Shown here one piece after another: positions 25,264 to 44,410 of a DNA stretch of 64,000 bases. Both the position numbers and the translations under genes were made by a program. The stretch lies in the sequence record MZ501268.1; one strand, 5' to 3'. A model generated the notes under the pieces. The model saw only the letters and a program-made list of their open reading frames with translations, ran no database searches and was not told the DNA's origin. Every line of letters starts with the position of its first letter. Position 1 is the first letter of the stretch.

Positions 25264-25626
25264 ATGAATCACTTACTGTTGGATGTAACCGAGAAAGTAT
25301 CCCCTGTTACCCGCCAGTTTATTAACACTGATTGGGATGGAATTATCCGTGATGTTAGTTTATACATCATGCGACTTTATTGTGCTTCTCAATTACTCGG
25401 ACAACACATTAACCACAACCCCGCAGACCACCTACGGGATATCCAATGGCGCTACGGTTTTGACCCACAGGACGGGCAGGTTGCTGTGCAGTTTACCAAA
25501 CTGTATAAACACCTTGGGGACGCCATCGGTCTTTATGTACAACAGACCCAGCCTAAGAAACTATTAACTGTTATCCGTGTAAGTTCGGCTAACAACATTT
25601 TCCAATTGCATTTAGGGTATGCCTAA
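25264..25626 (+). CDS. hypothetical protein
   Basis: Start moved from 25075 to ATG 25264 (RBS AGGAGG, after terminator and promoter). Confidence 0.7.
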   Translation: MNHLLLDVTEKVSPVTRQFINTDWDGIIRDVSLYIMRLYCASQLLGQHINHNPADHLRDIQWRYGFDPQDGQVAVQFTKLYKHLGDAIGLYVQQTQPKKLLTVIRVSSANNIFQLHLGYA

Positions 25627-27374
25627 TGAACACCTCATTAACGACGAATGAAGTAGTTGAACATTTAGACCAGTATGTGATTGGTCAAGTCGACGCCAAA
25701 CGTGCCATTGCATTGGCTTACCGTGAGCGTTCATTGAAAGCTGAAAACAGCGGCAACGAATGGAAGTATATCACCCCCAGTAATATCCTGATGGTCGGTC
25801 CGAGCGGAAGTGGGAAAACTGAGCTCGCCAGACAACTCGCCGATATGACCAATTCGCCTTTTGTGAAATGTGAAATCACCGAGTTCACACAAGTCGGTTA
25901 TTACGGCCGGGATGTCAAGACTATTTTGACCGACCTCATTAACGAAGCCATTCGTATCGCCCCTGAGATCTGGAAGAAAGAAAACAAACCGAAACTCAGT
26001 AAACCAAACCGTGACCTGTTGGCGTTGATGCTCAAAGACCCAGAAACGTTGGATGTCTTTGTTAAAGCACTTAACGTCACCGTCGATAAATGCACCGTGC
26101 CATTTGTGGAAGAGAAGCTCCTCAACGGAACCACACTACGTAAGCTTAATGTGCGTTATGGTTGGCGCGCGAACCCTCTGCTGGCTGCTATTGATAAAAA
26201 GGCAGATAGCCCTGAGAAGGGAGAAGAAGAACCACCGATGTCTGACGTATCGGCCTGGACACAGTGGTATGTTCGCACCAAGATGAATTTTAACAAGCTT
26301 GGTTACTCGGGCACTGAAGACAGCCTGGTGAAAGAAGCAGCCCGGGTGTTAGAAGCGATTCCTATTAAGGATAAAATTGAGCCGGTGTTGATTGAGGTCA
26401 TCGGCGAAACACTCAATGAGAAACGCAAAAAGATCATTGCTGGTCGCGGGGCCAGTCAACCAAAACTGATTCGTCTGTTACTTGATGAAAAGGACCATAA
26501 AGTCCTGTGCCGTAAATTGCTGGAAACCATGGGTGCGCATCTATGGATGAAACTCGACACCATCATTGACATCAGTGATGCACTGAATCAAAGCAAGAAC
26601 CCGCCTTCTGACTTCATCGTCCGTCTGGTTGAAGAACGTGGTATCGTGTTCATTGATGAATTCGACAAGATCTTCTTAGACAGTCGGGGTAGTAACGTCG
26701 GTAACATGGGGGTGGTGCGTGATCTGATGCCTTACCTGGATGGGATTACCACCGAAGTCTCTACCAAGACAGAACGTGAATCTCATTCGATGTTTGGTGG
26801 GCGTGAGGAAAAGTACTCCATCAATACTGCTAATATTCTCTGGATCGCCTCAGGTGCGTTTCATCTGGCAAAAGTGAATGATGTACCGGCTGAGATCTTA
26901 GGGCGCCTCCCAGTGCATGTGAAGCTGTTACAGTTGACTGCTGATGATCTGGAACGGGTGCTGATTAAACCGCACGGTTCTATCATCAGTATCGTAACCA
27001 CAGTGATGCAGGCCGAAGGAGCCGAGTTCACCATTGACCCGGGTGCCATCAAAGCGATTGCTCAGCTGGCTTATGAATGTAACACCCACGGGGAAGACAC
27101 CGGCGCGCGTCGTTTGAAAGGGGTTTGTTTCGAACTCTTTAAAGCGATGCTCTATGGTGCGTCTAACCTGTTACCAGAAGAACGCAAGATTCGTTTCACC
27201 GAAGCGCAAGTATTGGCTGAACGTGATCGGATACTGGCAACCATCGAACCGCGTAAGCGTAAGCTTAATCCCACTACACCGTTTACCACAGACGATAAAG
27301 AAACCGACCCTAGCAAACGCTTAACCAATGCAATTGCTGAGATTGGTCGTCTGGTGAACATCACCAACGAATAA
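25626..27374 (+). CDS. hslU: HslU/ClpY-like AAA+ ATPase
   Basis: LDQYVIGQVDAKRA, TPSNILMVGPSGSGKTELAR, GYYG pore loop, IVFIDEFDK, GVVRDLMP, EILGRLP, TGARRL. Confidence 0.9.
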   Translation: MNTSLTTNEVVEHLDQYVIGQVDAKRAIALAYRERSLKAENSGNEWKYITPSNILMVGPSGSGKTELARQLADMTNSPFVKCEITEFTQVGYYGRDVKTILTDLINEAIRIAPEIWKKENKPKLSKPNRDLLALMLKDPETLDVFVKALNVTVDKCTVPFVEEKLLNGTTLRKLNVRYGWRANPLLAAIDKKADSPEKGEEEPPMSDVSAWTQWYVRTKMNFNKLGYSGTEDSLVKEAARVLEAIPIKDKIEPVLIEVIGETLNEKRKKIIAGRGASQPKLIRLLLDEKDHKVLCRKLLETMGAHLWMKLDTIIDISDALNQSKNPPSDFIVRLVEERGIVFIDEFDKIFLDSRGSNVGNMGVVRDLMPYLDGITTEVSTKTERESHSMFGGREEKYSINTANILWIASGAFHLAKVNDVPAEILGRLPVHVKLLQLTADDLERVLIKPHGSIISIVTTVMQAEGAEFTIDPGAIKAIAQLAYECNTHGEDTGARRLKGVCFELFKAMLYGASNLLPEERKIRFTEAQVLAERDRILATIEPRKRKLNPTTPFTTDDKETDPSKRLTNAIAEIGRLVNITNE

Positions 27375-34431: not shown

Positions 34432-34741
34432 CAACATCTTTCAATTGGTTCAACGACCTTCGATTAAACAAAGCGTCACATTAGCACAAAAGTTTGTGCT
34501 GGAATTAGAAAATGCTTTTGTCACATTACAGCTGACTGCGGCATCCGCGAAGTACGATAACTTGGTTTATGGTTATCCAGCACGCGATGAAGTGAAAGCT
34601 GTTCAACAATGTGCACGCATCTTATTAACGAAAGCCAACTTCAAACCGGTGGTAGATCTGTTAAAGAATGTAACAGTCCATGATGACCCCATTAACATGG
34701 TGAAGGCAAGACAAGCAGAGTATCATCAATTAATGCAGTAA
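34424..34741 (+). CDS. hypothetical protein
   Basis: Start moved to ATG 34424, overlapping the upstream stop. Confidence 0.6.
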   Translation: MGNNIFQLVQRPSIKQSVTLAQKFVLELENAFVTLQLTAASAKYDNLVYGYPARDEVKAVQQCARILLTKANFKPVVDLLKNVTVHDDPINMVKARQAEYHQLMQ

Positions 34742-34750
34742 CAACATAAT

Positions 34751-34792
34751 CGGCATAAGAGAAGAGGCGTTTGCCTCTTCTCTGATTATGCG
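34751..34792. terminator. bidirectional terminator flanked by TTATGC on both strands
   Basis: CGGCATAA + AGAGAAGAGGC-GTTT-GCCTCTTCTCT + GATTATGCG, between convergent genes. Confidence 0.85.
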
Positions 34793-34802
34793 CTCTTTTT
34801 TT

Positions 34803-35120
34803 TTAACTTGAGGTAGGTTGGTCGGCAGTTAACGTAGAAGGGAAGCTTCTGTCTTTACCCCAGATAAGACGTATTCCGCCTGTACCTGGTGAATAGGCAC
34901 TCCCCATTCCGCCACCACCGCCATAATTACCACCGGTCCCACCGCTTGCGGTTTTGCCGCCAGATCCACCTTTACCAAACTGGGCAAATGCCCCCGCACT
35001 ACCGGATGTACTGCCGGTGGTAGCAAATAACTTCTGACCTACCACGGTAGTATCGCTATCCGGCAACGAACCTCCTCCAGAACCTGGCCGATAGCTTGAG
35101 TTTAGTAACAGTTCTAGCAC
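34803..35120 (-). CDS. short glycine-rich MLE-family protein (internally shortened relative of 23899..24504)
   Basis: MLELLL.., VGQKLFATTG, GGIRLIWGKDRSFP. Confidence 0.65.
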   Translation of the reverse strand: MLELLLNSSYRPGSGGGSLPDSDTTVVGQKLFATTGSTSGSAGAFAQFGKGGSGGKTASGGTGGNYGGGGGMGSAYSPGTGGIRLIWGKDRSFPSTLTADQPTSS

Positions 35121-35129
35121 GGTGGCTCC

Positions 35130-37253
35130 TTACCAGCTAAACGCTTTATTGGCACGTGGCATAACAACTTCCATTGGAATGTCTTCGGTGACCAGTTCTT
35201 GAGACTCCATGTCATCAAGCCACGCTTCCATCCCAGCTGACAGGAACTGGTGTTCATGATCTTTCTCTTCGAACGATTCCATACCAGCAGCCTCAGCGAT
35301 CTCTTCCACATCAACAGTTGACCCGTAACGATCCAGACCCATCAACTGATCTACCTGGGATTTAGACCAAGCCATGATGTCTTCTGAGCGGGTAGAGATG
35401 TTTGGCATAGAACCGGTGTCCAACACGAAGTTGAAGATGTAGACATCGTCTTCCTGGCCAATACGGTGCATGCGGGAAACCGCCTGCTCGTAATGGTGGA
35501 AACGGAAGGGTTTGTTCAACATCAATCCACAGTTCGCTTCAGTCAAGGGTACTGCCTCAGCCAGTGAACGGAAGGTAGCAATCCCTGGGTTAACATCTTC
35601 AGAAGCACGGAATGACTTCACCATCTCAACCAGGTCTTTGTTGGTATCGCCGTAAACCACTACCGGCTTATACCCCAGACCGCGACAGATGAGTGCCATG
35701 GTTTCCAATGCTGGGACGAAGTCTGTAAAGATCAGGGTCTTCTTCTTGGCGTTGTCGATGTACGTTCCAAACGGAATGGCTTCAGCAAGCTCGACATGAC
35801 ACATGGTGCGCTCTTTACCCAGCACGCGACCTAAGCACTCACCTTTGATCTTCAGGTCAACATACTTGATCACTGACCGAGCATCTTTGAAAGGCTTGCG
35901 CATGTGGTCAGGGATTACCGGGATGATGCGTTTGAGTTCGTAGTCATTACAGTACTGACTGTACGGACCCATCCATTCTGCCTGGTACCCTTGCTTGATG
36001 AACATCTCCACGTAGTCGTTGTACTTCTTGAAGTCCTCTTTCTCTTTTGGAGAATGCAGGGTCTTCTCATACCACGCTAAAGCGTCATCGTAGATCTTCT
36101 GGTAGGTGGCTTTGTTTTCCGTGTAGAACTTAAAGCGTTCCTGGATAAAGGCCATCATGATCCGTTGGATGTTGTCCAAGGTATAATGCGCGCCATTCTT
36201 GATCTTCACCTTGACCGTGGCTTCAATCGGTTTGGTTGACATGAACTTCGACTTGGGTACAGAGAAGCTCACAATCCCCAGACGGTTAGCGAGGATATCG
36301 TTAGCCTTCGTCGCTGTCTTACCCCAGATCTTACGCATAGCCAATTCTACGTCCGCTGTGAAGCCTGGGATCAACGTACGGAATAAAGGCACAGCTTCGG
36401 TACCCATTGCCGTCAACGCCGTTCCTGAGGCCCACACGATGTCCTGTGCGCCTGATACCTGACAGAGCTCCACAAACAAACCGGTACGGGTAGACTCTTT
36501 CGTCTTCTGGTTAAGGTTGTGTGACTCGTCAAGGATAATCCCGACATTCGGTAAGCGGTGCTCTTTTACCAGCTTCACGATCTCATCGAGTTTCTCATAG
36601 TGGGCAACAATCCACTTAGTGCCTTTGCGATACGGCTGACCGTATTCGGCAACCCACACATCTTGCTCAGTGGTGAGTTCAGTGGTAATGGTGCGTTCCC
36701 AGACATCACGGGTGGCTTTCTTAGGCGCGATCACAATCACGAAGTCTTTCTTACGACAGAGCATCGTCATGATGCTGCACAGGGTTTTACCGGCACCCGG
36801 TGCTGCGGACAGTAATGCACCCCGTAGGCTGTAACGTGGCACTGCGGTATTGTAATAGTTCAGCCAGTTACGTTGTTCCGGTAATGGCGATTTCTTTACC
36901 AGTTTCAACTGACTGAGATCGATGATGTCTTCGTACTGTTCATCAAGGTTACGCATCCAGGTGTTCTTACGCAACAGATCCAGGATCTTTCCAATTCCCC
37001 GGCGGTCAGTCCAGGTCTTGTCGTGGTCCAGTAACTGTTTGAAGATGTACTCGACCTCAATGGCAAAGAAGCTGTTAAAGCTGATCTTGTTCTGGGTCAC
37101 CTCACGGAAAAGGTAACCTGCTACCTTACTGGTTTTCCAGACCTTTAGAATGTCACGAGTCGCTAACGGAGCATTAAAACCGGTAATGGTAATAACATCA
37201 TTCTTTTCTTCAACATTAATAAAGCCTAACGCACGGCGGAGATAATCAAACAT
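35130..37253 (-). CDS. SNF2/SWI2-family helicase (conserved in phiKZ-like phages)
   Basis: SAAPGAGKT, ILDESH, WASGT, QAVSRMHRIGQ. Confidence 0.9.
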   Translation of the reverse strand: MFDYLRRALGFINVEEKNDVITITGFNAPLATRDILKVWKTSKVAGYLFREVTQNKISFNSFFAIEVEYIFKQLLDHDKTWTDRRGIGKILDLLRKNTWMRNLDEQYEDIIDLSQLKLVKKSPLPEQRNWLNYYNTAVPRYSLRGALLSAAPGAGKTLCSIMTMLCRKKDFVIVIAPKKATRDVWERTITTELTTEQDVWVAEYGQPYRKGTKWIVAHYEKLDEIVKLVKEHRLPNVGIILDESHNLNQKTKESTRTGLFVELCQVSGAQDIVWASGTALTAMGTEAVPLFRTLIPGFTADVELAMRKIWGKTATKANDILANRLGIVSFSVPKSKFMSTKPIEATVKVKIKNGAHYTLDNIQRIMMAFIQERFKFYTENKATYQKIYDDALAWYEKTLHSPKEKEDFKKYNDYVEMFIKQGYQAEWMGPYSQYCNDYELKRIIPVIPDHMRKPFKDARSVIKYVDLKIKGECLGRVLGKERTMCHVELAEAIPFGTYIDNAKKKTLIFTDFVPALETMALICRGLGYKPVVVYGDTNKDLVEMVKSFRASEDVNPGIATFRSLAEAVPLTEANCGLMLNKPFRFHHYEQAVSRMHRIGQEDDVYIFNFVLDTGSMPNISTRSEDIMAWSKSQVDQLMGLDRYGSTVDVEEIAEAAGMESFEEKDHEHQFLSAGMEAWLDDMESQELVTEDIPMEVVMPRANKAFSW

Positions 37254-39116: not shown

Positions 39117-40454
39117 ATGTCAAGCAAGAAAGCAGCCAAACAGAATCCAAAGAAGCAGCATAAGCAAGCGCTTGCACAGCAGATGCAAGAAGTGAGCACC
39201 GACCTGCAGTGGGCTCAGCAGATCTTCCCACACATCGACCAGTACTTTGTTGACCTGGTTGGTAACGACGTTCATCGCCGCTATAAAGGCGCAACCGAAT
39301 ACCCGAAACATTTTGGCGCCCGTGTTGAGATCAATGAAAAACACAGTCGCTTCGATGTCATGAAGTTCGTCACCTTCAATGAAGAAGGTGTCTTGGCCAA
39401 AGATGGCGATATTAATGAAGGCGAATACGAAATGGGTTATGTCCATTTCCACACGCTGAAACAGATCGCTGAAGATGCACACAAAAAGCAACGTCCTGTT
39501 GATATCGGCTGGGCCTATGTACCTCACATCAACTTCGACTACTCTGTTGATGCCGCACTGCGTGCTGCTGAGAAACACGAGCATTTCGAAGCGGCTGTGA
39601 AAGCACACCTGGGCAAAGCGCTGGTTATCTACAATAACGTGGTTGAAGAACTGAAGCAGGAATACGCCGCAGAGAACGATGACGGTCTCTATATCGGTGT
39701 GTGCTTCTACTACAACCCGGAAACCAACATGCTGGAATATGTCATGCAGAAACACGGCGTGACTGACCTGATTGACGGCAAAGCATCAGAACGTGATTTC
39801 CGTGACCTGCCTGCAACGAACGGTGAAACCTCACCAATCGTAGTAGACGGTGACGAGTCGTTCCGTAACTATGCGTCATGCATGCTGCGACTGGTAGCTG
39901 ATGTCGCGAAGTGGGAACGTATCAGTAAGCCAAGCAAAGCCCGTATGGAAGCTGCCGCTGATGACCTGGTTGACCGTATGATCAGTAATGCAGAGTCCGT
40001 CTTTGACAACGCGAAAACCAAAGCCAAAGAAGACGGCATCACTGCAGAGCTCGGCATGCGTTACAACGGCCTGCGCGGTATGTTGGAAGTGGTTTACTTC
40101 GATGACCACAACAATGTCTGTCAGATCGACCTGGGAATGGATGCAGCCGCTGTGCTGTTGATCATGACCCGTATCGAACCTGACCTGCAGTTGCATGTCA
40201 CTCCACGTTTCAACAAAGCTTTCGTCGAACGTTTTGGTTCTGGTGACCGTACGGTAATTTCTGCAGATGGCACCACCATCGCGACAGAAATCAAACCAGG
40301 TCTGCAGATCATCGACGACTTGCCATTCATCCCTGAGACTGCCTCGTACCCACGCGGTCAAACTCCGGACCTTCTGGTAGTCGATGAATTCGGTGCTACA
40401 GAAGAAGCGGATGATGAAGTGGCTGCTGATGAAAATTACGCACTGAAGTCGTAA
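39117..40454 (+). CDS. hypothetical acidic protein
   Basis: 445 aa; RBS AAGGA; strong codon bias. Confidence 0.8.
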   Translation: MSSKKAAKQNPKKQHKQALAQQMQEVSTDLQWAQQIFPHIDQYFVDLVGNDVHRRYKGATEYPKHFGARVEINEKHSRFDVMKFVTFNEEGVLAKDGDINEGEYEMGYVHFHTLKQIAEDAHKKQRPVDIGWAYVPHINFDYSVDAALRAAEKHEHFEAAVKAHLGKALVIYNNVVEELKQEYAAENDDGLYIGVCFYYNPETNMLEYVMQKHGVTDLIDGKASERDFRDLPATNGETSPIVVDGDESFRNYASCMLRLVADVAKWERISKPSKARMEAAADDLVDRMISNAESVFDNAKTKAKEDGITAELGMRYNGLRGMLEVVYFDDHNNVCQIDLGMDAAAVLLIMTRIEPDLQLHVTPRFNKAFVERFGSGDRTVISADGTTIATEIKPGLQIIDDLPFIPETASYPRGQTPDLLVVDEFGATEEADDEVAADENYALKS

Positions 40455-40525: not shown

Positions 40526-40565
40526 TGCAGAAAATTTCAGACCTATATGACGTAAGTGAATAGAG
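40526..40565 (+). promoter_or_regulatory. extended early promoter, copy 1
   Basis: TGCAGAAAATTTCAGACCTATATGACGTAAGTGAATAGAG; near-duplicate at 42184. Confidence 0.7.
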
Positions 40566-41061: not shown

Positions 41062-41547
41062 ATGTCGAATGGGGTAATGTGGATGATATTGGCAGGGCTG
41101 ATAGCGATTGGCTTTAAAATAATCGGTACGGCTTTGTCATCCCCGGCATCGACTGTTGCAGATCTAAAACGCTGGGCTTCTATGAAGACACCAGATTTCA
41201 TTGATGCGGCGTTCACCGGGAACGCGATGTACTGCATCACCGAACGTACTGCAAGACGTCATTTGGAGTTGTATGGTCCAAATGGTATTGTGGGAATGTA
41301 CAGTGATGTGTTTGATGAACTACGACAATGTACCACTATGGACGGGTGGGTTATCGACGGTAAGATTGTCGACAATAGAAAAGGGGCTGTACTGATCACC
41401 TTATCATTGCATCGCAATGACGTGGAGACCAGACGTGAGTATACGGTCCCATACTTGCAAATCTTGCGAGTTACCGATACGTTCTCACCTGAAATCCTGC
41501 GTCGTTCTGTTCGCGATGTTCAGGTTATTAATGAACAAGTTATTTAA
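41062..41547 (+). CDS. N-terminally membrane-anchored hypothetical protein
   Basis: RBS AAGGAG; TM segment VMWMILAGLIAIGF. Confidence 0.7.
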   Translation: MSNGVMWMILAGLIAIGFKIIGTALSSPASTVADLKRWASMKTPDFIDAAFTGNAMYCITERTARRHLELYGPNGIVGMYSDVFDELRQCTTMDGWVIDGKIVDNRKGAVLITLSLHRNDVETRREYTVPYLQILRVTDTFSPEILRRSVRDVQVINEQVI

Positions 41548-42183: not shown

Positions 42184-42223
42184 TGTAGAAAATCTTACAC
42201 CTATATGACCTAGGTGATAAAGA
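42184..42223 (+). promoter_or_regulatory. extended early promoter, copy 2
   Basis: TGTAGAAAATCTTACACCTATATGACCTAGGTGATAAGAG. Confidence 0.7.
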
Positions 42224-42282
42224 GTAGTAAAAGAAGTTCCCGTCGTATCCAATTTAACCTAATCGTCTTGTGAGGTATTACC

Positions 42283-42909
42283 ATGTCAAACATTCATTCT
42301 CTGAATCAAACTCCTACTAACCCGGCTATGGCTGAAGCTTTCTTACAAGCGGCGACCAAGAACAAATCGCCGGAGATCGGTGGTGACACCTTACAAGCCG
42401 AATTAGCCAACATGGAACAGGTGAAACCTGAGCCAGACACCACCGCAAGCCGCCTGGCCAAATCTCTGGCCTCCATGAACGCTGGTGTGAAGAACGTCAG
42501 CGACAAAGTCAACGAAGTGAAGGAAGAGATCATGCATCACACCGATGGTTCTGACAACATGTTTGCAGAAGTAGAAGAGATCATGGAACCGGAATTCACC
42601 GGAAGCCATAGTCGTGTTAAAGCGATGGCCCTGATGGTCGCAGGTTCTGGTTTGGCAGCCACTGCAGTCGGCGCACTGTTTACCCGTGATGGCAAGACCA
42701 TCAAGAACATGGCGATCAGCAGTCTGGTATCCGGCAGTGCGTTGGTCGGGATGGAAGCCATTAAAGCCAAATGTGCGCCGTCTATTGCTGACCGCATGAC
42801 CATGGGTAAAAAGCGTAGTGCTAAGTTACTGGGTGGTGGGATGCTCATCGGCGCAGTAACCACAACGATCTGCCTGTCTGTAGCCCGCATCTTTAACTCT
42901 GGAGAATAA
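42283..42909 (+). CDS. membrane-associated protein, FxxxxxxxEP family member 1
   Basis: MFAEVEEIMEP followed by Gly/Ala-rich hydrophobic helices; RBS GAGGT. Confidence 0.7.
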   Translation: MSNIHSLNQTPTNPAMAEAFLQAATKNKSPEIGGDTLQAELANMEQVKPEPDTTASRLAKSLASMNAGVKNVSDKVNEVKEEIMHHTDGSDNMFAEVEEIMEPEFTGSHSRVKAMALMVAGSGLAATAVGALFTRDGKTIKNMAISSLVSGSALVGMEAIKAKCAPSIADRMTMGKKRSAKLLGGGMLIGAVTTTICLSVARIFNSGE

Positions 42910-42910
42910 C

Positions 42911-43291
42911 ATGAGTAACTTATTCGACACTATCGAAGAAGTGCAAGAACCTGTAGTGGATCTGGCAGTATCAAGACGCACTATCATGATGGCTTCCTGT
43001 ATTCGTGCAGCAGCGCTGTCTACCGGGGTTGTAGTGGGTGCGATGGCAATGAAGATCAAGCCCAGCACCATCGCGAAAGCTGCGGTGATTCCAGCAGTGA
43101 TTGAGCTGGCTACAACTTATGCCCAAGTACACCGCGCTGATGAAGACATCGTGGTACTGGAGGCTGCGGCAACCAACAGCAAAACACACTTCAATAACGC
43201 CGCGATGAACTTCGTCGGTGGTGCAGTCGCAATCGTCGGTGGTGCAGTTATTGCCCGCTGGCTCAAAGGTCCGGATCTCCCGGCTGAATAA
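42911..43291 (+). CDS. membrane-associated protein, FxxxxxxxEP family member 2
   Basis: LFDTIEEVQEP plus hydrophobic helices; RBS GGAG. Confidence 0.7.
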   Translation: MSNLFDTIEEVQEPVVDLAVSRRTIMMASCIRAAALSTGVVVGAMAMKIKPSTIAKAAVIPAVIELATTYAQVHRADEDIVVLEAAATNSKTHFNNAAMNFVGGAVAIVGGAVIARWLKGPDLPAE

Positions 43292-43309
43292 ATCCCTTTA
43301 ATAAGGAAC

Positions 43310-43504
43310 ATGGCGATGTTCAATAAATCAGATAAAGTTCAAGAACCAACTTGCGAAATAACCGTAAACGTAAACCTGCAAATCGTTGGCATGGCCATGG
43401 GCTGTGTACTTGCACAAAGCGAGAACACTTTAGTCAAAGCAAGCGGTGTCGGTCTGGTGACTGCATCGTTCCTGCGCATGGTAAACAAACTGGCTAAGAT
43501 TTAA
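43310..43504 (+). CDS. membrane-associated protein, FxxxxxxxEP family member 3
   Basis: MFNKSDKVQEP plus hydrophobic helices; RBS AAGGA. Confidence 0.65.
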   Translation: MAMFNKSDKVQEPTCEITVNVNLQIVGMAMGCVLAQSENTLVKASGVGLVTASFLRMVNKLAKI

Positions 43505-43574
43505 GAACACCCCTGTAGTAAACAAACCCAATCCAAACAACTGTAATTAACCTAACTGTATAAGAGAGATTCCC

Positions 43575-43874
43575 ATGAAAGATACTAACGTAAACGCAAT
43601 CAACGAAACTGCACGTACCGCTGGCGAAACTGTTGAAGCAGCAGTAAAAGAAACCATGTTCGCTAAAGTGACTGAAGTGACTGAACCATCAGTTGCGAAG
43701 AAAGTGGCTAAGCGCACCCTGATCGCCGGTGGTGTGCTGGCGCTGTGTGGTCTGGGTTACTTCGGTTACCGTGCAGTGAAGAAAACCAAAGCGATCGTCA
43801 TCGTGGCGGAAGGTGATGCGGCAAACGAAGCAACTGCTGAAGAACCTGCAGCTACTGACGACGCAGCTGCGTAA
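43575..43874 (+). CDS. membrane-associated protein, FxxxxxxxEP family member 4
   Basis: MFAKVTEVTEP plus TM segment LIAGGVLALCGLGYFGY. Confidence 0.7.
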   Translation: MKDTNVNAINETARTAGETVEAAVKETMFAKVTEVTEPSVAKKVAKRTLIAGGVLALCGLGYFGYRAVKKTKAIVIVAEGDAANEATAEEPAATDDAAA

Positions 43875-43880
43875 TTTTGT

Positions 43881-43904
43881 GAGGGCTAGGATATCCTAGC
43901 CCTT
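43881..43904 (+). terminator. intrinsic terminator
   Basis: GAGGGCTAGG-ATAT-CCTAGCCCTT, then a T-run. Confidence 0.75.
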
Positions 43905-43924
43905 ATCTATTCATTCTTTTTTTT

Positions 43925-44410
43925 TTGCTTGAGGTGTCTATGCACGTGATCACGATCGGTGCCGTTGCTATTCTGATCTTCATTATTTTCTTGTGCATAT
44001 CAGAGTGGCGTTTAAAAGTCAGCAAGAACCTTATCTTCCGCGAAGTCACCCGGATTGCGTATTCCATTATCCGCTACACAGAAGTGAAACAGATCACCCC
44101 CGAGATCTATTTGATCGCAGCAGAGCTTCAGGGGAGAATGGTGAAAGTAGGGAACTTCTCCATTACCCAGAAAGACCGTGAAGTCAACATGACTATTGCC
44201 AAGTACATTTCAATCTTTGGTAATCAGCGTGTGCGTGACCCAGTGATCTTACTGCATGTCATCGCCAGACGGTTAAATGAGTTCGATGGGATATCAGCTA
44301 AATCCCTGGTATCGACAAACGGACGCCTGGAGCTCGTTATAGGGCGTGATGATGCAACAGACTATGATCGTGTCATCTATCGCTTCAACTCACCCCAGAC
44401 GTTGTTTTAG
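43925..44410 (+). CDS. N-terminally membrane-anchored hypothetical protein
   Basis: TM segment VITIGAVAILIFIIFLCI; likely start ATG 43940 (RBS GAGGT). Confidence 0.7.
   Translation: MLEVSMHVITIGAVAILIFIIFLCISEWRLKVSKNLIFREVTRIAYSIIRYTEVKQITPEIYLIAAELQGRMVKVGNFSITQKDREVNMTIAKYISIFGNQRVRDPVILLHVIARRLNEFDGISAKSLVSTNGRLELVIGRDDATDYDRVIYRFNSPQTLF

What the first reader, a model, noticed from the sequence alone, without database searches (positions are those of the whole stretch)
42283..43874. Four tandem early membrane proteins share a hidden 11-residue motif before their hydrophobic helices
Seen: otherwise dissimilar proteins contain MFAEVEEIMEP (42283), LFDTIEEVQEP (42911), MFNKSDKVQEP (43310) and MFAKVTEVTEP (43575). 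The consensus is [ML]F-x-x-[VIS]-[ETD]-[EK]-[IV]-x-E-P, each followed ~10 residues later by Gly/Ala-rich hydrophobic helices. They follow the duplicated promoter and have strong RBS and codon bias. Inference: a shared targeting, docking or cleavage signal in a family of membrane-active proteins acting together. Possible roles are building or remodelling the early phage membrane compartment known for phiKZ-like phages, or a hetero-oligomeric pore or exclusion complex.
Basis: partly seen in the sequence, partly recalled or inferred. Interest (0 to 1): 0.7.

Follow-up and report, generated by a model that had tools for sequence, protein, structure and literature searches.

The report
Shared docking-like motif in phage membrane proteins
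Four neighbouring genes of a giant Erwinia phage encode related small membrane proteins that all carry the same short, conserved, disordered peptide just before their first membrane helix; the peptide has changed in step across these genes in related phages, so it probably binds a shared partner, but its function is untested.

Summary
The window is Erwinia jumbo phage AH06 (Agricanvirus, the genus of the nucleus-forming phage RAY). Genes AH06_145-148 (RAY gp139-142) form one unit with a phiKZ-type early-promoter-like element upstream and a hairpin terminator downstream. Each protein carries [M/L]F-x7-EP 6-10 residues before its first hydrophobic helix.

- **Uniqueness:** in the annotated genes of the 275-kb genome the motif occurs only in these four. 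The MF form gives the same result in RAY.
- **Conservation:** F, E and P are invariant in all 24 orthologues tabulated (35-70% identity), while their codons vary.
- **Not "otherwise dissimilar":** profile comparison shows that A, B and D are paralogues. C shares only the motif.
- **Structure:** AlphaFold2 puts the motif in a disordered segment ahead of a confident helical bundle.
- **Sister clade:** pEa_SNUABM_48, Salmonella SA002 and metagenomic relatives keep the A-B-C cassette with a different shared form, Q-[IVT]-E-x-[VI]-x-[IVM]-[P/T]. The motif has therefore changed in concert across paralogues.

My best reading is a short linear docking peptide for a common partner. That partner and the biological role are unknown. 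The roles I considered are an early membrane complex, superinfection exclusion and vesicle handling. There are no Pfam, PDB or fold matches. The complex prediction gave no answer.

The parts
42184..42217 (+). phiKZ-type early-promoter-like element (core CCTATATGAC followed by GGTGA), about 66 nt upstream of gene A
   Evidence: It repeats 40526-40559. The genome holds four copies, each ahead of a + strand gene. It is conserved at the same place in all clade-1 relatives, and an EL-like CCTACATTAC form sits there in clade 2. It resembles the predicted promoters of 201phi2-1, OBP and phiKZ listed in PMC7058600 Table 2. No expression data.
42283..42909 (+). Gene A (AH06_145, 208 aa; RAY gp139; phrog_11650). 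A low-confidence N-terminal half, the motif, then three hydrophobic helices.
   Evidence: AlphaFold2 gives helices 109-133, 137-164 and 176-205 at pLDDT about 85, with residues 77-106 below 50.
42559..42591 (+). Motif copy in A: MFAEVEEIMEP (residues 93-103)
42911..43291 (+). Gene B (AH06_146, 126 aa; RAY gp140; phrog_11484). Its start lies 1 nt after the stop of A.
   Evidence: AlphaFold2 mean pLDDT 80.9, helices 18-46, 51-75, 78-87 and 90-119.
42920..42952 (+). Motif copy in B: LFDTIEEVQEP (residues 4-14)
   Evidence: No secondary structure; pLDDT below 50 at residues 7-10 and 66 on average over 11-20.
43316..43504 (+). Gene C (AH06_147, 62 aa from the annotated ATG; an in-frame ATG at 43310 would add 2 residues; RAY gp141; phrog_10939)
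   Evidence: All orthologues start MFN.
43316..43348 (+). Motif copy in C: MFNKSDKVQEP (residues 1-11; the initiator Met is motif position 1)
43575..43874 (+). Gene D (AH06_148, 99 aa; RAY gp142; phrog_11081). One hydrophobic helix and an acidic tail. Highest codon adaptation in the genome.
43656..43688 (+). Motif copy in D: MFAKVTEVTEP (residues 28-38)
43879..43925 (+). Intrinsic-terminator-like hairpin (12-bp stem) followed by a T run, closing the four-gene unit
   Evidence: The hairpin and T run are conserved after gene D in RAY and four metagenomic relatives.

Best explanation
AH06_145-148 form a small operon. It is probably expressed early, and it encodes paralogous small inner-membrane proteins. 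Each presents the same short peptide of about 11 residues just before its first membrane helix. The peptide is acidic, has three hydrophobic positions (2, 5 and 8: F, V/I, V/I) and ends in Pro. I read it as a short linear docking motif: disordered on its own, and binding one common partner at the membrane so that all four proteins are tied to the same hub. The partner could be a phage or a host protein. The membrane-anchored neighbours AH06_142 and AH06_149 are candidates.

Shown: the motif exists, is unique, conserved and predicted to be disordered, the proteins are paralogues, they form one operon, and the motif evolves in concert. Inferred: that the motif binds a partner, which partner, that the motif faces the cytoplasm, that expression is early, and the biological role. 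For the role, my guess is an early membrane complex, for example one that excludes superinfecting phages or handles the membrane at the entry site.
For: - **Uniqueness and non-randomness:**
- **Protein-level selection:** F, E and P are invariant in 24 of 24 sequences of the four families, while their codons vary (TTC/TTT, GAA/GAG, four Pro codons). All further D and A orthologues keep them.
- **Disorder:** AlphaFold2 gives the motif no secondary structure and low confidence. In B, residues 1-4 and 7-10 are below 50. In A, residues 77-106 are below 50. The helices that follow are confident.
- **Common origin but selective retention:** every pairwise profile alignment is anchored on the motif, and between C and the other three it is the only thing left.
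- **Concerted change:** in the sister clade (7 cassettes), A', B' and C' share a different form, Q-[IVT]-E-x-[VI]-x-[IVM]-[P/T]. Motif position 10 is E in every clade-1 paralogue, and hydrophobic in A' 7 of 7 and B' 7 of 7. F2 is absent from all of them. The hydrophobic triad moves from positions 2, 5, 8 to 5, 8, 10.
- **Fixed gene order and tight spacing:** the order is the same everywhere and B starts 1 nt after A ends.
- **Likely high expression:** codon adaptation is high.
Against: No partner has been identified. The four-chain complex prediction gave no answer, so it counts neither way. Topology is unresolved. Loop 2 of A is strongly basic, which argues that its N-terminus and motif are cytoplasmic, but charge counts for B and D are ambiguous (my reading of the sequences). 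If the motif faces different sides of the membrane in different paralogues, a single partner is unlikely. The concerted change rests on a single split between two clades, and short-tract gene conversion between paralogues could also produce it. Early expression is inferred from promoter similarity only.
Confidence: 0.45

Rival explanations
1. The motif is an assembly element within the set. The four peptides bind each other, or the membrane domain of the neighbouring subunit, and so build a hetero-oligomeric membrane complex such as a pore, a scaffold or an exclusion complex.
For: The four proteins are paralogues, always co-occur in fixed order and share one operon. Concerted change of the motif across paralogues is also what mutually contacting elements would show.
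Against: The complex prediction gave no answer, which is not evidence either way. In clade 2 the fourth member varies or is missing while A', B' and C' keep their shared form. Disordered acidic peptides are unlikely to pack against one another without a basic or hydrophobic receptor.
Confidence: 0.2
2. The motif is a processing or degradation signal. It could be a protease cleavage site next to Glu-Pro, or a tag read by an adaptor and unfoldase so that early membrane proteins are removed on schedule. The phage's own SspB-like AH06_38 with the AAA+ protein AH06_122 would be one such pair.
For: The last four positions, hydrophobic-x-E-P, recall the hydrophobic/x/Glu sites of phage prohead proteases (T4 L/I-x-E; phiKZ S/A/G-x-E; from my own knowledge). 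AH06 encodes an SspB homologue (PF04386, E 2.3e-11) that ends in LSIVK, which resembles the ClpX-binding tail of E. coli SspB (that comparison is from memory). It also encodes an AAA+ ATPase. Both are present in RAY and absent from the two clade-2 phage records that lack the F...EP form.
Against: Pro directly after the scissile Glu is unusual for such proteases (my own knowledge). The genes carry an early-type promoter, and their RAY orthologues are not annotated as virion proteins or listed in the crude-lysate proteome, although that proteome is shallow. The SspB co-occurrence rests on one clade split, and many genes differ between these genera. The motif does not resemble the SspB-bound peptides I know of (from memory).
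Confidence: 0.12
3. The motif determines membrane insertion or topology. It would be an acidic N-terminal tail translocated or positioned by YidC or the proton-motive force, as in the Pf3 and M13 coat proteins.
For: The motif is acidic, lies directly before the first hydrophobic helix in all four, and is at the very N-terminus in B and C.
Against: In A the motif follows 92 hydrophilic residues with no signal sequence, and basic residues sit between the motif and the helix. A general insertion signal would not need invariant F, E and P, nor a clade-specific form. It would also be expected in the other small proteins of the genome that have hydrophobic segments, and it is absent from them.
Confidence: 0.1
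4. The motif has no separate function. It is simply the slowest-evolving remnant of a tandem duplication.
For: A, B and D are paralogues.
Against: The motif is better conserved between paralogues than the membrane helices. It is invariant at three positions across 24 sequences despite synonymous turnover. It also switches form in parallel in separate paralogues. A passive relic would decay independently in each copy.
Confidence: 0.08
5. The cassette is a lysis module (holin, antiholin or spanin-like proteins), and the motif is a regulatory cytoplasmic tail.
For: It is a cluster of small membrane proteins. I recognised no holin in AH06, and no membrane protein stands in the five genes after endolysin AH06_28, which has a signal-like N-terminus. 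The phiKZ holin binds a cytoplasmic regulator through its cytoplasmic domain (PMC12894885).
Against: There is no adjacent endolysin and I saw no lipoprotein-type N-terminus or spanin-like pair in the four proteins. The unit has an early-type promoter and its own terminator. No similarity to any holin family appears in Pfam, NCBIfam or PHROGs.
Confidence: 0.05

Closest known systems
Short linear docking motifs shared by several clients of one hub (for example sliding-clamp-binding peptides, the eukaryotic FFAT 'phenylalanines in an acidic tract' motif, SspB-bound tags)
   Same: It is about 10 residues long and predicted to be disordered. It has a few invariant hydrophobic and acidic anchor positions. 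It is present in several proteins that otherwise differ, and its consensus shifts between lineages.
   Different: The consensus matches none of the motifs I know (comparison from memory, not a database test). The partner is unknown and binding is not shown.
Small early membrane proteins of phages that act at the envelope (T4 Imm and Sp, and other superinfection-exclusion proteins)
   Same: They are small phage-encoded proteins with one to three hydrophobic helices, here under an early-type promoter.
   Different: No sequence or profile similarity. Those proteins are not known to share a common peptide. No exclusion phenotype has been tested here.
phiKZ lysis cassette (holin, endolysin, i-spanin, o-spanin, regulator gp143; PMC12894885)
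   Same: A cluster of small membrane proteins in a chimallivirus, in which a cytoplasmic tail of a membrane protein is proposed to bind a soluble regulator.
   Different: There is no endolysin or spanin in or next to this cassette, the promoter is of the early type, and there is no homology.
Prohead-protease cleavage motifs of giant phages (phiKZ S/A/G-x-E, T4 L/I-x-E)
   Same: A hydrophobic residue, any residue, then Glu at the end of the motif.
   Different: Pro follows the Glu. The proteins are membrane proteins under an early-type promoter and are not among the annotated or detected virion proteins of RAY. Cleavage was not tested.
PHROG families phrog_11650, phrog_11484, phrog_10939 and phrog_11081 (all of unknown function)
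   Same: Each of the four proteins matches one of these families over its full length, with E-values from 2e-31 to 6e-89.
   Different: PHROGs treats them as four unrelated families of unknown function. The shared motif and the relationship among A, B and D are not recorded there.

Membership tests
PHROG families 11650 / 11484 / 10939 / 11081 (unknown function) | Full-length profile match | tested here: met
   E 5.9e-89, 1.8e-48, 2.4e-31 and 3.2e-44, each over essentially the whole profile
One paralogous family comprising A, B, C and D | Significant profile-profile similarity that extends beyond the 11-residue motif | tested here: inconclusive
   Met for B-D (43 columns, probability 89%, E 2.4e-6), A-B (112 columns, E 5e-4) and A-D (25 columns, E 1.3e-4). 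For C only the motif aligns (E 0.009-0.06). HMM cross-hits among all AH06 ORFs agree.
Short linear (docking) motif | Lies in an intrinsically disordered segment | tested here: met
   AlphaFold2 gives no secondary structure and pLDDT below 50-66 over the motif in B and below 50 in A
Short linear (docking) motif | A few invariant positions under purifying selection amid variable flanks | tested here: met
   F, E and P are invariant in 24 of 24 sequences with synonymous codon variation. The flanks vary.
Short linear (docking) motif | Demonstrated binding to a defined partner domain | not testable with these tools
   No partner is known.
Holin / lysis cassette | Adjacent to endolysin and spanin genes, late expression, membership of a holin family | tested here: not met
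   No endolysin or spanin among the neighbours. Early-type promoter. No holin family hit in Pfam, PHROGs or NCBIfam. Lethality on expression was not tested.
Twin-arginine (Tat) signal peptide (considered because of SRR before helix 1 of B) | Conserved S/T-R-R-x-F-L-K ahead of a mildly hydrophobic region | tested here: not met
   The RR pair is not conserved. The orthologues have KR, TR, TR, TR and RR.
Type IV prepilin-like leader (considered because of F-x-x-[IV]-E) | Gly at position -1 and a hydrophobic helix directly after F-T-L-I-E | tested here: not met
   Position -1 is M, L or Q, and an acidic stretch plus 6-10 further residues separate the F from the hydrophobic helix
Prohead-protease substrates of giant phages | Virion or prohead protein cleaved after Glu | tested here: inconclusive
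   RAY gp139-142 are annotated as hypothetical while nearby gp145 is 'virion structural'. They are not in the RAY and Deimos-Minion lysate proteome table, which is shallow. Cleavage itself cannot be tested here.
Chimalliviridae core genome | Conserved across nucleus-forming phages | tested here: not met
   tblastn finds A and B only in Agricanvirus. The B profile finds only its own cluster among 1.84 billion representatives. The neighbouring DUF7194 gene is found in 286 phage records, but the cassette is absent from the syntenic place in Serratia phage KpHz_2. It is not mentioned in the core-genome paper.

The most novel reading that the evidence does not exclude
The four proteins, and A', B' and C' in the sister clade, are subunits or clients of a previously unrecognised early membrane machine of a chimallivirus sub-lineage. 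Their co-evolving juxtamembrane peptide is the handle by which one hub protein gathers or removes them. That hub could be one of the conserved membrane-anchored neighbours AH06_142 or AH06_149, or the phage's own SspB-like adaptor acting with its AAA+ ATPase. The machine would control the host inner membrane at the phage entry site, for example in formation or opening of the early infection vesicle, or in exclusion of superinfecting phages.
Probability: 0.12. Interest if true: 0.8.

Novelty: new variant of a known kind. Interest (0 to 1): 0.5.

Why it matters
Nucleus-forming jumbo phages begin infection inside a host-membrane-derived vesicle. The papers I read name no phage-encoded membrane protein made early in infection. 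This cassette gives a concrete and compact target: four small, probably highly expressed membrane proteins under an early-type promoter, with one three-residue handle (F, E, P) that can be mutated in all of them. RAY, a phage of the same genus, is already used for cell biology (PMC10299810).

The finding also gives a clean natural example of a linear motif that evolves in concert across paralogues, with two lineage-specific forms. That pattern predicts a co-evolving partner that can be searched for. The scope is limited: the cassette occurs in one sub-lineage (Agricanvirus, pEa_SNUABM_48 and SA002-like phages and metagenomic relatives), not in all chimalliviruses.

Tried and rejected
- **Complex prediction.** The four-chain job (A residues 85-208, B, C, D, with my own shallow alignments) scored 0.00 with chain pLDDT about 40. 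The verdict was 'no answer', so it counts neither for nor against binding.
- **Remote homology and fold.**
  - Pfam, NCBIfam and PHROGs gave no functional hit.
  - The B profile found only its own cluster among 1.84 billion representatives.
  - The PDB sequence search gave 0 hits.
  - Foldseek against PDB and AFDB clusters gave nothing below E 0.6.
  - ESM Atlas features scored 0.81 or less and the structural neighbours were generic membrane helices.
- **Expression data.** The sequencing-run search found DNA holders only, so I did not use read laying.
- **Nucleotide-level signal.** Rejected, because the motif codons differ at synonymous sites between paralogues and between orthologues.
- **Internal translation starts at the motif Met in A and D.** Rejected: I see no Shine-Dalgarno-like sequence upstream, and position 1 is Leu (CTG) in some D orthologues and Gln or Leu in B.
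- **Tat signal and prepilin leader.** Both rejected (see the membership tests).
- **A weak 'EP' in AH06_144 (SVIEAEP).** It is not conserved in the orthologues.
- **The relaxed pattern F-x2-[VILMST]-x2-[VILMAQ]-x-EP.** It hits one further annotated gene, the RNA polymerase beta-prime subunit AH06_268. I take that as chance.
- **Local excess of membrane proteins.** About 56 of 338 genes have a hydrophobic segment at a loose threshold and several other clusters exist, so the local cluster is not exceptional.
- **Literature.** Neither the RAY core-genome paper, nor the Agricanvirus proteomics paper, nor the vesicle and review papers mention gp139-142 or phage early membrane proteins. 'gp140' in the proteomics table appears to be Deimos-Minion numbering, which would correspond to about RAY gp135.
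Full report
**Identity of the window.** The window is bases 62001-126000 of Erwinia phage AH06 (MZ501268.1; 275,293 bp; genus Agricanvirus; host Erwinia billingiae). The same genus contains phage RAY, which has been shown to form a phage nucleus (PMC10299810). The four ORFs are listed below. GenBank annotates all four as hypothetical.

| Label | Gene | Window coordinates | Length | RAY orthologue | PHROG |
|---|---|---|---|---|---|
| A | AH06_145 | 42283-42909 | 208 aa | gp139 | 11650 |
| B | AH06_146 | 42911-43291 | 126 aa | gp140 | 11484 |
| C | AH06_147 | 43316-43504 | 62 aa | gp141 | 10939 |
| D | AH06_148 | 43575-43874 | 99 aa | gp142 | 11081 |

I rebuilt the whole genome from six annotated stretches and scanned every six-frame ORF of at least 40 aa (2946 ORFs, 256,663 residues).
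- [ML]F-x7-EP occurs 7 times against 2.1 expected from composition. Four hits are the four adjacent genes. The other three lie in unannotated or antisense frames, which is about the background number.
- The probability that these four proteins each carry it by chance is about 5e-13.
- Because the motif was defined after it was seen, I ran a control that did not assume it. For every window of four adjacent genes totalling 700 aa or less (121 windows), I asked whether the four share any pattern of 5 fixed positions within 11 residues in a 10-class alphabet. Only one window does, and it is this one.
- A 13-residue HMM of the motif recovers only these four proteins in the genome.
- In the complete RAY genome the DNA pattern for MF-x7-EP matches three times on both strands: gp139, gp141 and gp142. 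gp140 has the LF form.

**Conservation.** I looked for relatives in four ways.
- tblastn finds A and B only in the 17 Agricanvirus records.
- The large protein collection adds metagenomic relatives at 35-48% identity for A and 54-62% for D.
- I fetched their contigs, and the viral-contig scan adds one more.
- Every one has A, B, C and D in the same order, and every protein keeps the motif.

In the 24 sequences tabulated, F2, E10 and P11 are invariant while their codons vary (TTC/TTT, GAA/GAG, CCA/CCT/CCG/CCC). Selection is therefore on the peptide and not on the DNA or RNA. Position 1 is M, L or Q. Positions 5 and 8 are mostly V or I.

**Are the proteins otherwise dissimilar?** Not entirely.
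- Profile-profile comparison of the four families puts the best local alignment on the motif for every pair.
- It extends to 43 columns for B-D (probability 89%, E 2.4e-6), 112 columns for A-B (E 5e-4) and 25 columns for A-D (E 1.3e-4). For C only the motif aligns.
- When family HMMs are searched against all 2946 AH06 ORFs, A, B and D are each other's best non-self hits.
- AlphaFold2 gives B a confident helical bundle (mean pLDDT 80.9; helices 18-46, 51-75, 78-87 and 90-119).
- It gives the C-terminal half of A a matching set of three long helices (109-133, 137-164 and 176-205; pLDDT about 85).
- In both models the motif lies just ahead of helix 1, in a segment with no secondary structure and low confidence.

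So A is a B-like module with a long, poorly modelled N-terminal extension. D resembles the motif plus first helix of B. C is a small hairpin.

The hydrophobic segments are Gly/Ala-rich and only moderately hydrophobic, with Kyte-Doolittle 19-residue maxima of 1.5-2.3. Membrane insertion is likely but has not been shown.

**Transcription unit.**
- A 34-nt element at 42184-42217 has the core CCTATATGAC followed by GGTGA. It repeats one at 40526-40559, and two more copies lie elsewhere in the genome, each ahead of a + strand gene.
- It resembles the promoter consensus predicted for phiKZ (TATATTAC), 201phi2-1 and OBP (PMC7058600 Table 2).
- It is conserved at the same distance upstream of A in all clade-1 relatives. 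In the sister clade an EL-like CCTACATTAC version takes its place.
- A 12-bp hairpin with a T run follows D, and it is conserved too.
- B starts 1 nt after A stops.
- Codon adaptation, measured against the phage's long genes, is the highest in the genome for D, 92nd percentile for A, 82nd for B and average for C.

'Early' is an inference from the promoter type. I found no RNA data.

**A wider family with a second form of the motif.**
- The phage next closest by the neighbouring DUF7194 gene, pEa_SNUABM_48, has syntenic genes that the A, B and C HMMs recognise (E 2.7e-6, 3.5e-3 and 8e-11). These genes lack F...EP. Salmonella phage SA002 is similar.
- A profile of the C family then found about 18 further metagenomic clusters, and I fetched five more cassettes.
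- In these seven 'clade 2' cassettes, A', B' and C' again share a juxtamembrane peptide, but a different one: Q-[IVT]-E-x-[VI]-x-[IVM]-[P/T]. Examples are QVETVSIT in A', QIEKVAIP in B' and QVEEVRVP in C'.
- Aligned to clade 1, positions 5, 8 and 11 correspond.
- Position 10 is Glu in every clade-1 paralogue. It is Ile, Val, Met or Leu in A' (7 of 7) and Ile or Val in B' (7 of 7).
- The Phe at position 2 is absent from clade 2.
- The three hydrophobic anchor positions thus move from 2, 5, 8 to 5, 8, 10.
- The fourth gene varies in clade 2: 148-149 aa with a C-terminal helix, 40 aa, or absent.

Since A/A', B/B' and C/C' are orthologous pairs, the same motif positions changed in parallel in separate genes along one branch. 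That is what co-evolution with a shared ligand, or with each other, would produce. Gene conversion between paralogues is the alternative. Today's codons show no sign of recent conversion. The weakness of the argument is that it rests on one split between two clades.

**What it is not.**
- It belongs to no described family: Pfam, NCBIfam, PDB sequences, Foldseek on PDB and AFDB, and the ESM Atlas all gave nothing. The B profile finds only its own cluster among 1.84 billion representatives.
- It is not a chimallivirus core feature. It is absent at the syntenic place in Serratia phage KpHz_2 and is not mentioned in the core-genome study.
- It does not look like a lysis cassette. There is no endolysin or spanin nearby, and the promoter is of the early type.
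- It is not a Tat or prepilin signal.
- It is not among the annotated or detected virion or lysate proteins of RAY, although that proteome is shallow.

**Mechanism.** The best-supported reading is a short linear docking peptide. It is disordered on its own, has three hydrophobic anchors on an acidic background, is closed by Pro, and sits a few residues from the membrane surface. It is presented by several paralogous membrane proteins and changes in step among them. I put this at about 0.45.

The rivals are:
- mutual assembly of the four proteins (0.2);
- a cleavage site or degron (0.12), noting that the phage encodes an SspB-like adaptor ending in LSIVK and an AAA+ ATPase, and that both are absent from the two clade-2 phage records, which is a weak correlation;
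- an insertion or topology signal (0.1);
- a passive relic (0.08);
- a lysis module (0.05).

Topology is not settled. The very basic second loop of A argues that its N-terminus and motif are cytoplasmic, but charge counts for B and D are ambiguous (my reading). The biological role is a guess: an early membrane complex, exclusion, or vesicle handling.

**Verdict.** The motif is genuine, statistically robust and conserved, and as far as I could find it has not been described. The specific roles it proposed are untested. Interest is moderate: the lead is clean and testable in a phage group under active study, but it is limited to one sub-lineage and no function is known.

Noticed in passing
AH06 record 39460-39927 (outside the window; locus L003) and 87626-89374 (window 25626-27374; locus L004 38626-40374): The phage encodes an SspB-family adaptor (PF04386, E 2.3e-11) whose C-terminus, ...PSLSIVK, resembles the ClpX-binding tail of E. 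coli SspB (that comparison is from memory). It also encodes a 582-aa AAA+ ATPase annotated 'ATP-dependent protease' (AAA_2 and AAA domains). Both are present in RAY and absent from pEa_SNUABM_48 and Salmonella SA002. This may be a phage-run proteolysis or remodelling system.
   Followed up: partly
window 40526-40559 and 42184-42217; AH06 record 59505 and 197205 (outside the window): Four copies of a roughly 34-45 nt promoter-like element with core CCTATATGAC. The copy at record 197205 is nearly identical to the one before gene A for about 55 nt. It precedes AH06_252-255, another run of small genes, two of which have an N-terminal hydrophobic helix. Several TATATTAC variants with an upstream A tract occur elsewhere. 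All are on the + strand.
   Followed up: partly
window 42218-42282: The roughly 65-nt leader between the promoter-like core and the start of A is highly conserved among the clade-1 relatives, more so than many coding positions. A regulatory RNA or protein-binding role is possible. I did not fold it.
   Followed up: no
window 41062-41547 (AH06_142) and 43940-44410 (AH06_149): The genes on either side of the cassette encode proteins with one N-terminal hydrophobic helix and a soluble domain of about 130 residues. AH06_149 homologues (154-156 aa) follow the cassette in 11 of the 12 related cassettes seen (not L022). Genes the size of AH06_142 (157-167 aa) precede it wherever that flank was read. 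They are candidate partners for the motif.
   Followed up: no
L010 6202-6471 (same as L018 3702-3971): One metagenomic relative has an extra 89-aa, very basic ORF inserted between C and D. It is absent from all the other cassettes.
   Followed up: no
AH06 record 34451-35215 (outside the window; locus L003): The annotated lytic-transglycosylase endolysin AH06_28 has a signal-peptide-like or SAR-like hydrophobic N-terminus. None of the five genes after it looks like a membrane protein. I recognised no holin or spanin genes in AH06.
   Followed up: partly
window 42283-42420 (N-terminus of A): A second highly conserved stretch in A (residues about 11-44, NPAMAEAF...SP.IGGDTLQAE..NM) lies in a low-confidence region of the model. 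It is partly kept in clade 2 (ETLTCE.N.M). It may be another interaction site.
   Followed up: no
window 43575-43874: Gene D has the highest codon-adaptation score of all 338 predicted genes when scored against the phage's long genes. This suggests very high expression for a 99-residue protein of unknown function.
   Followed up: partly
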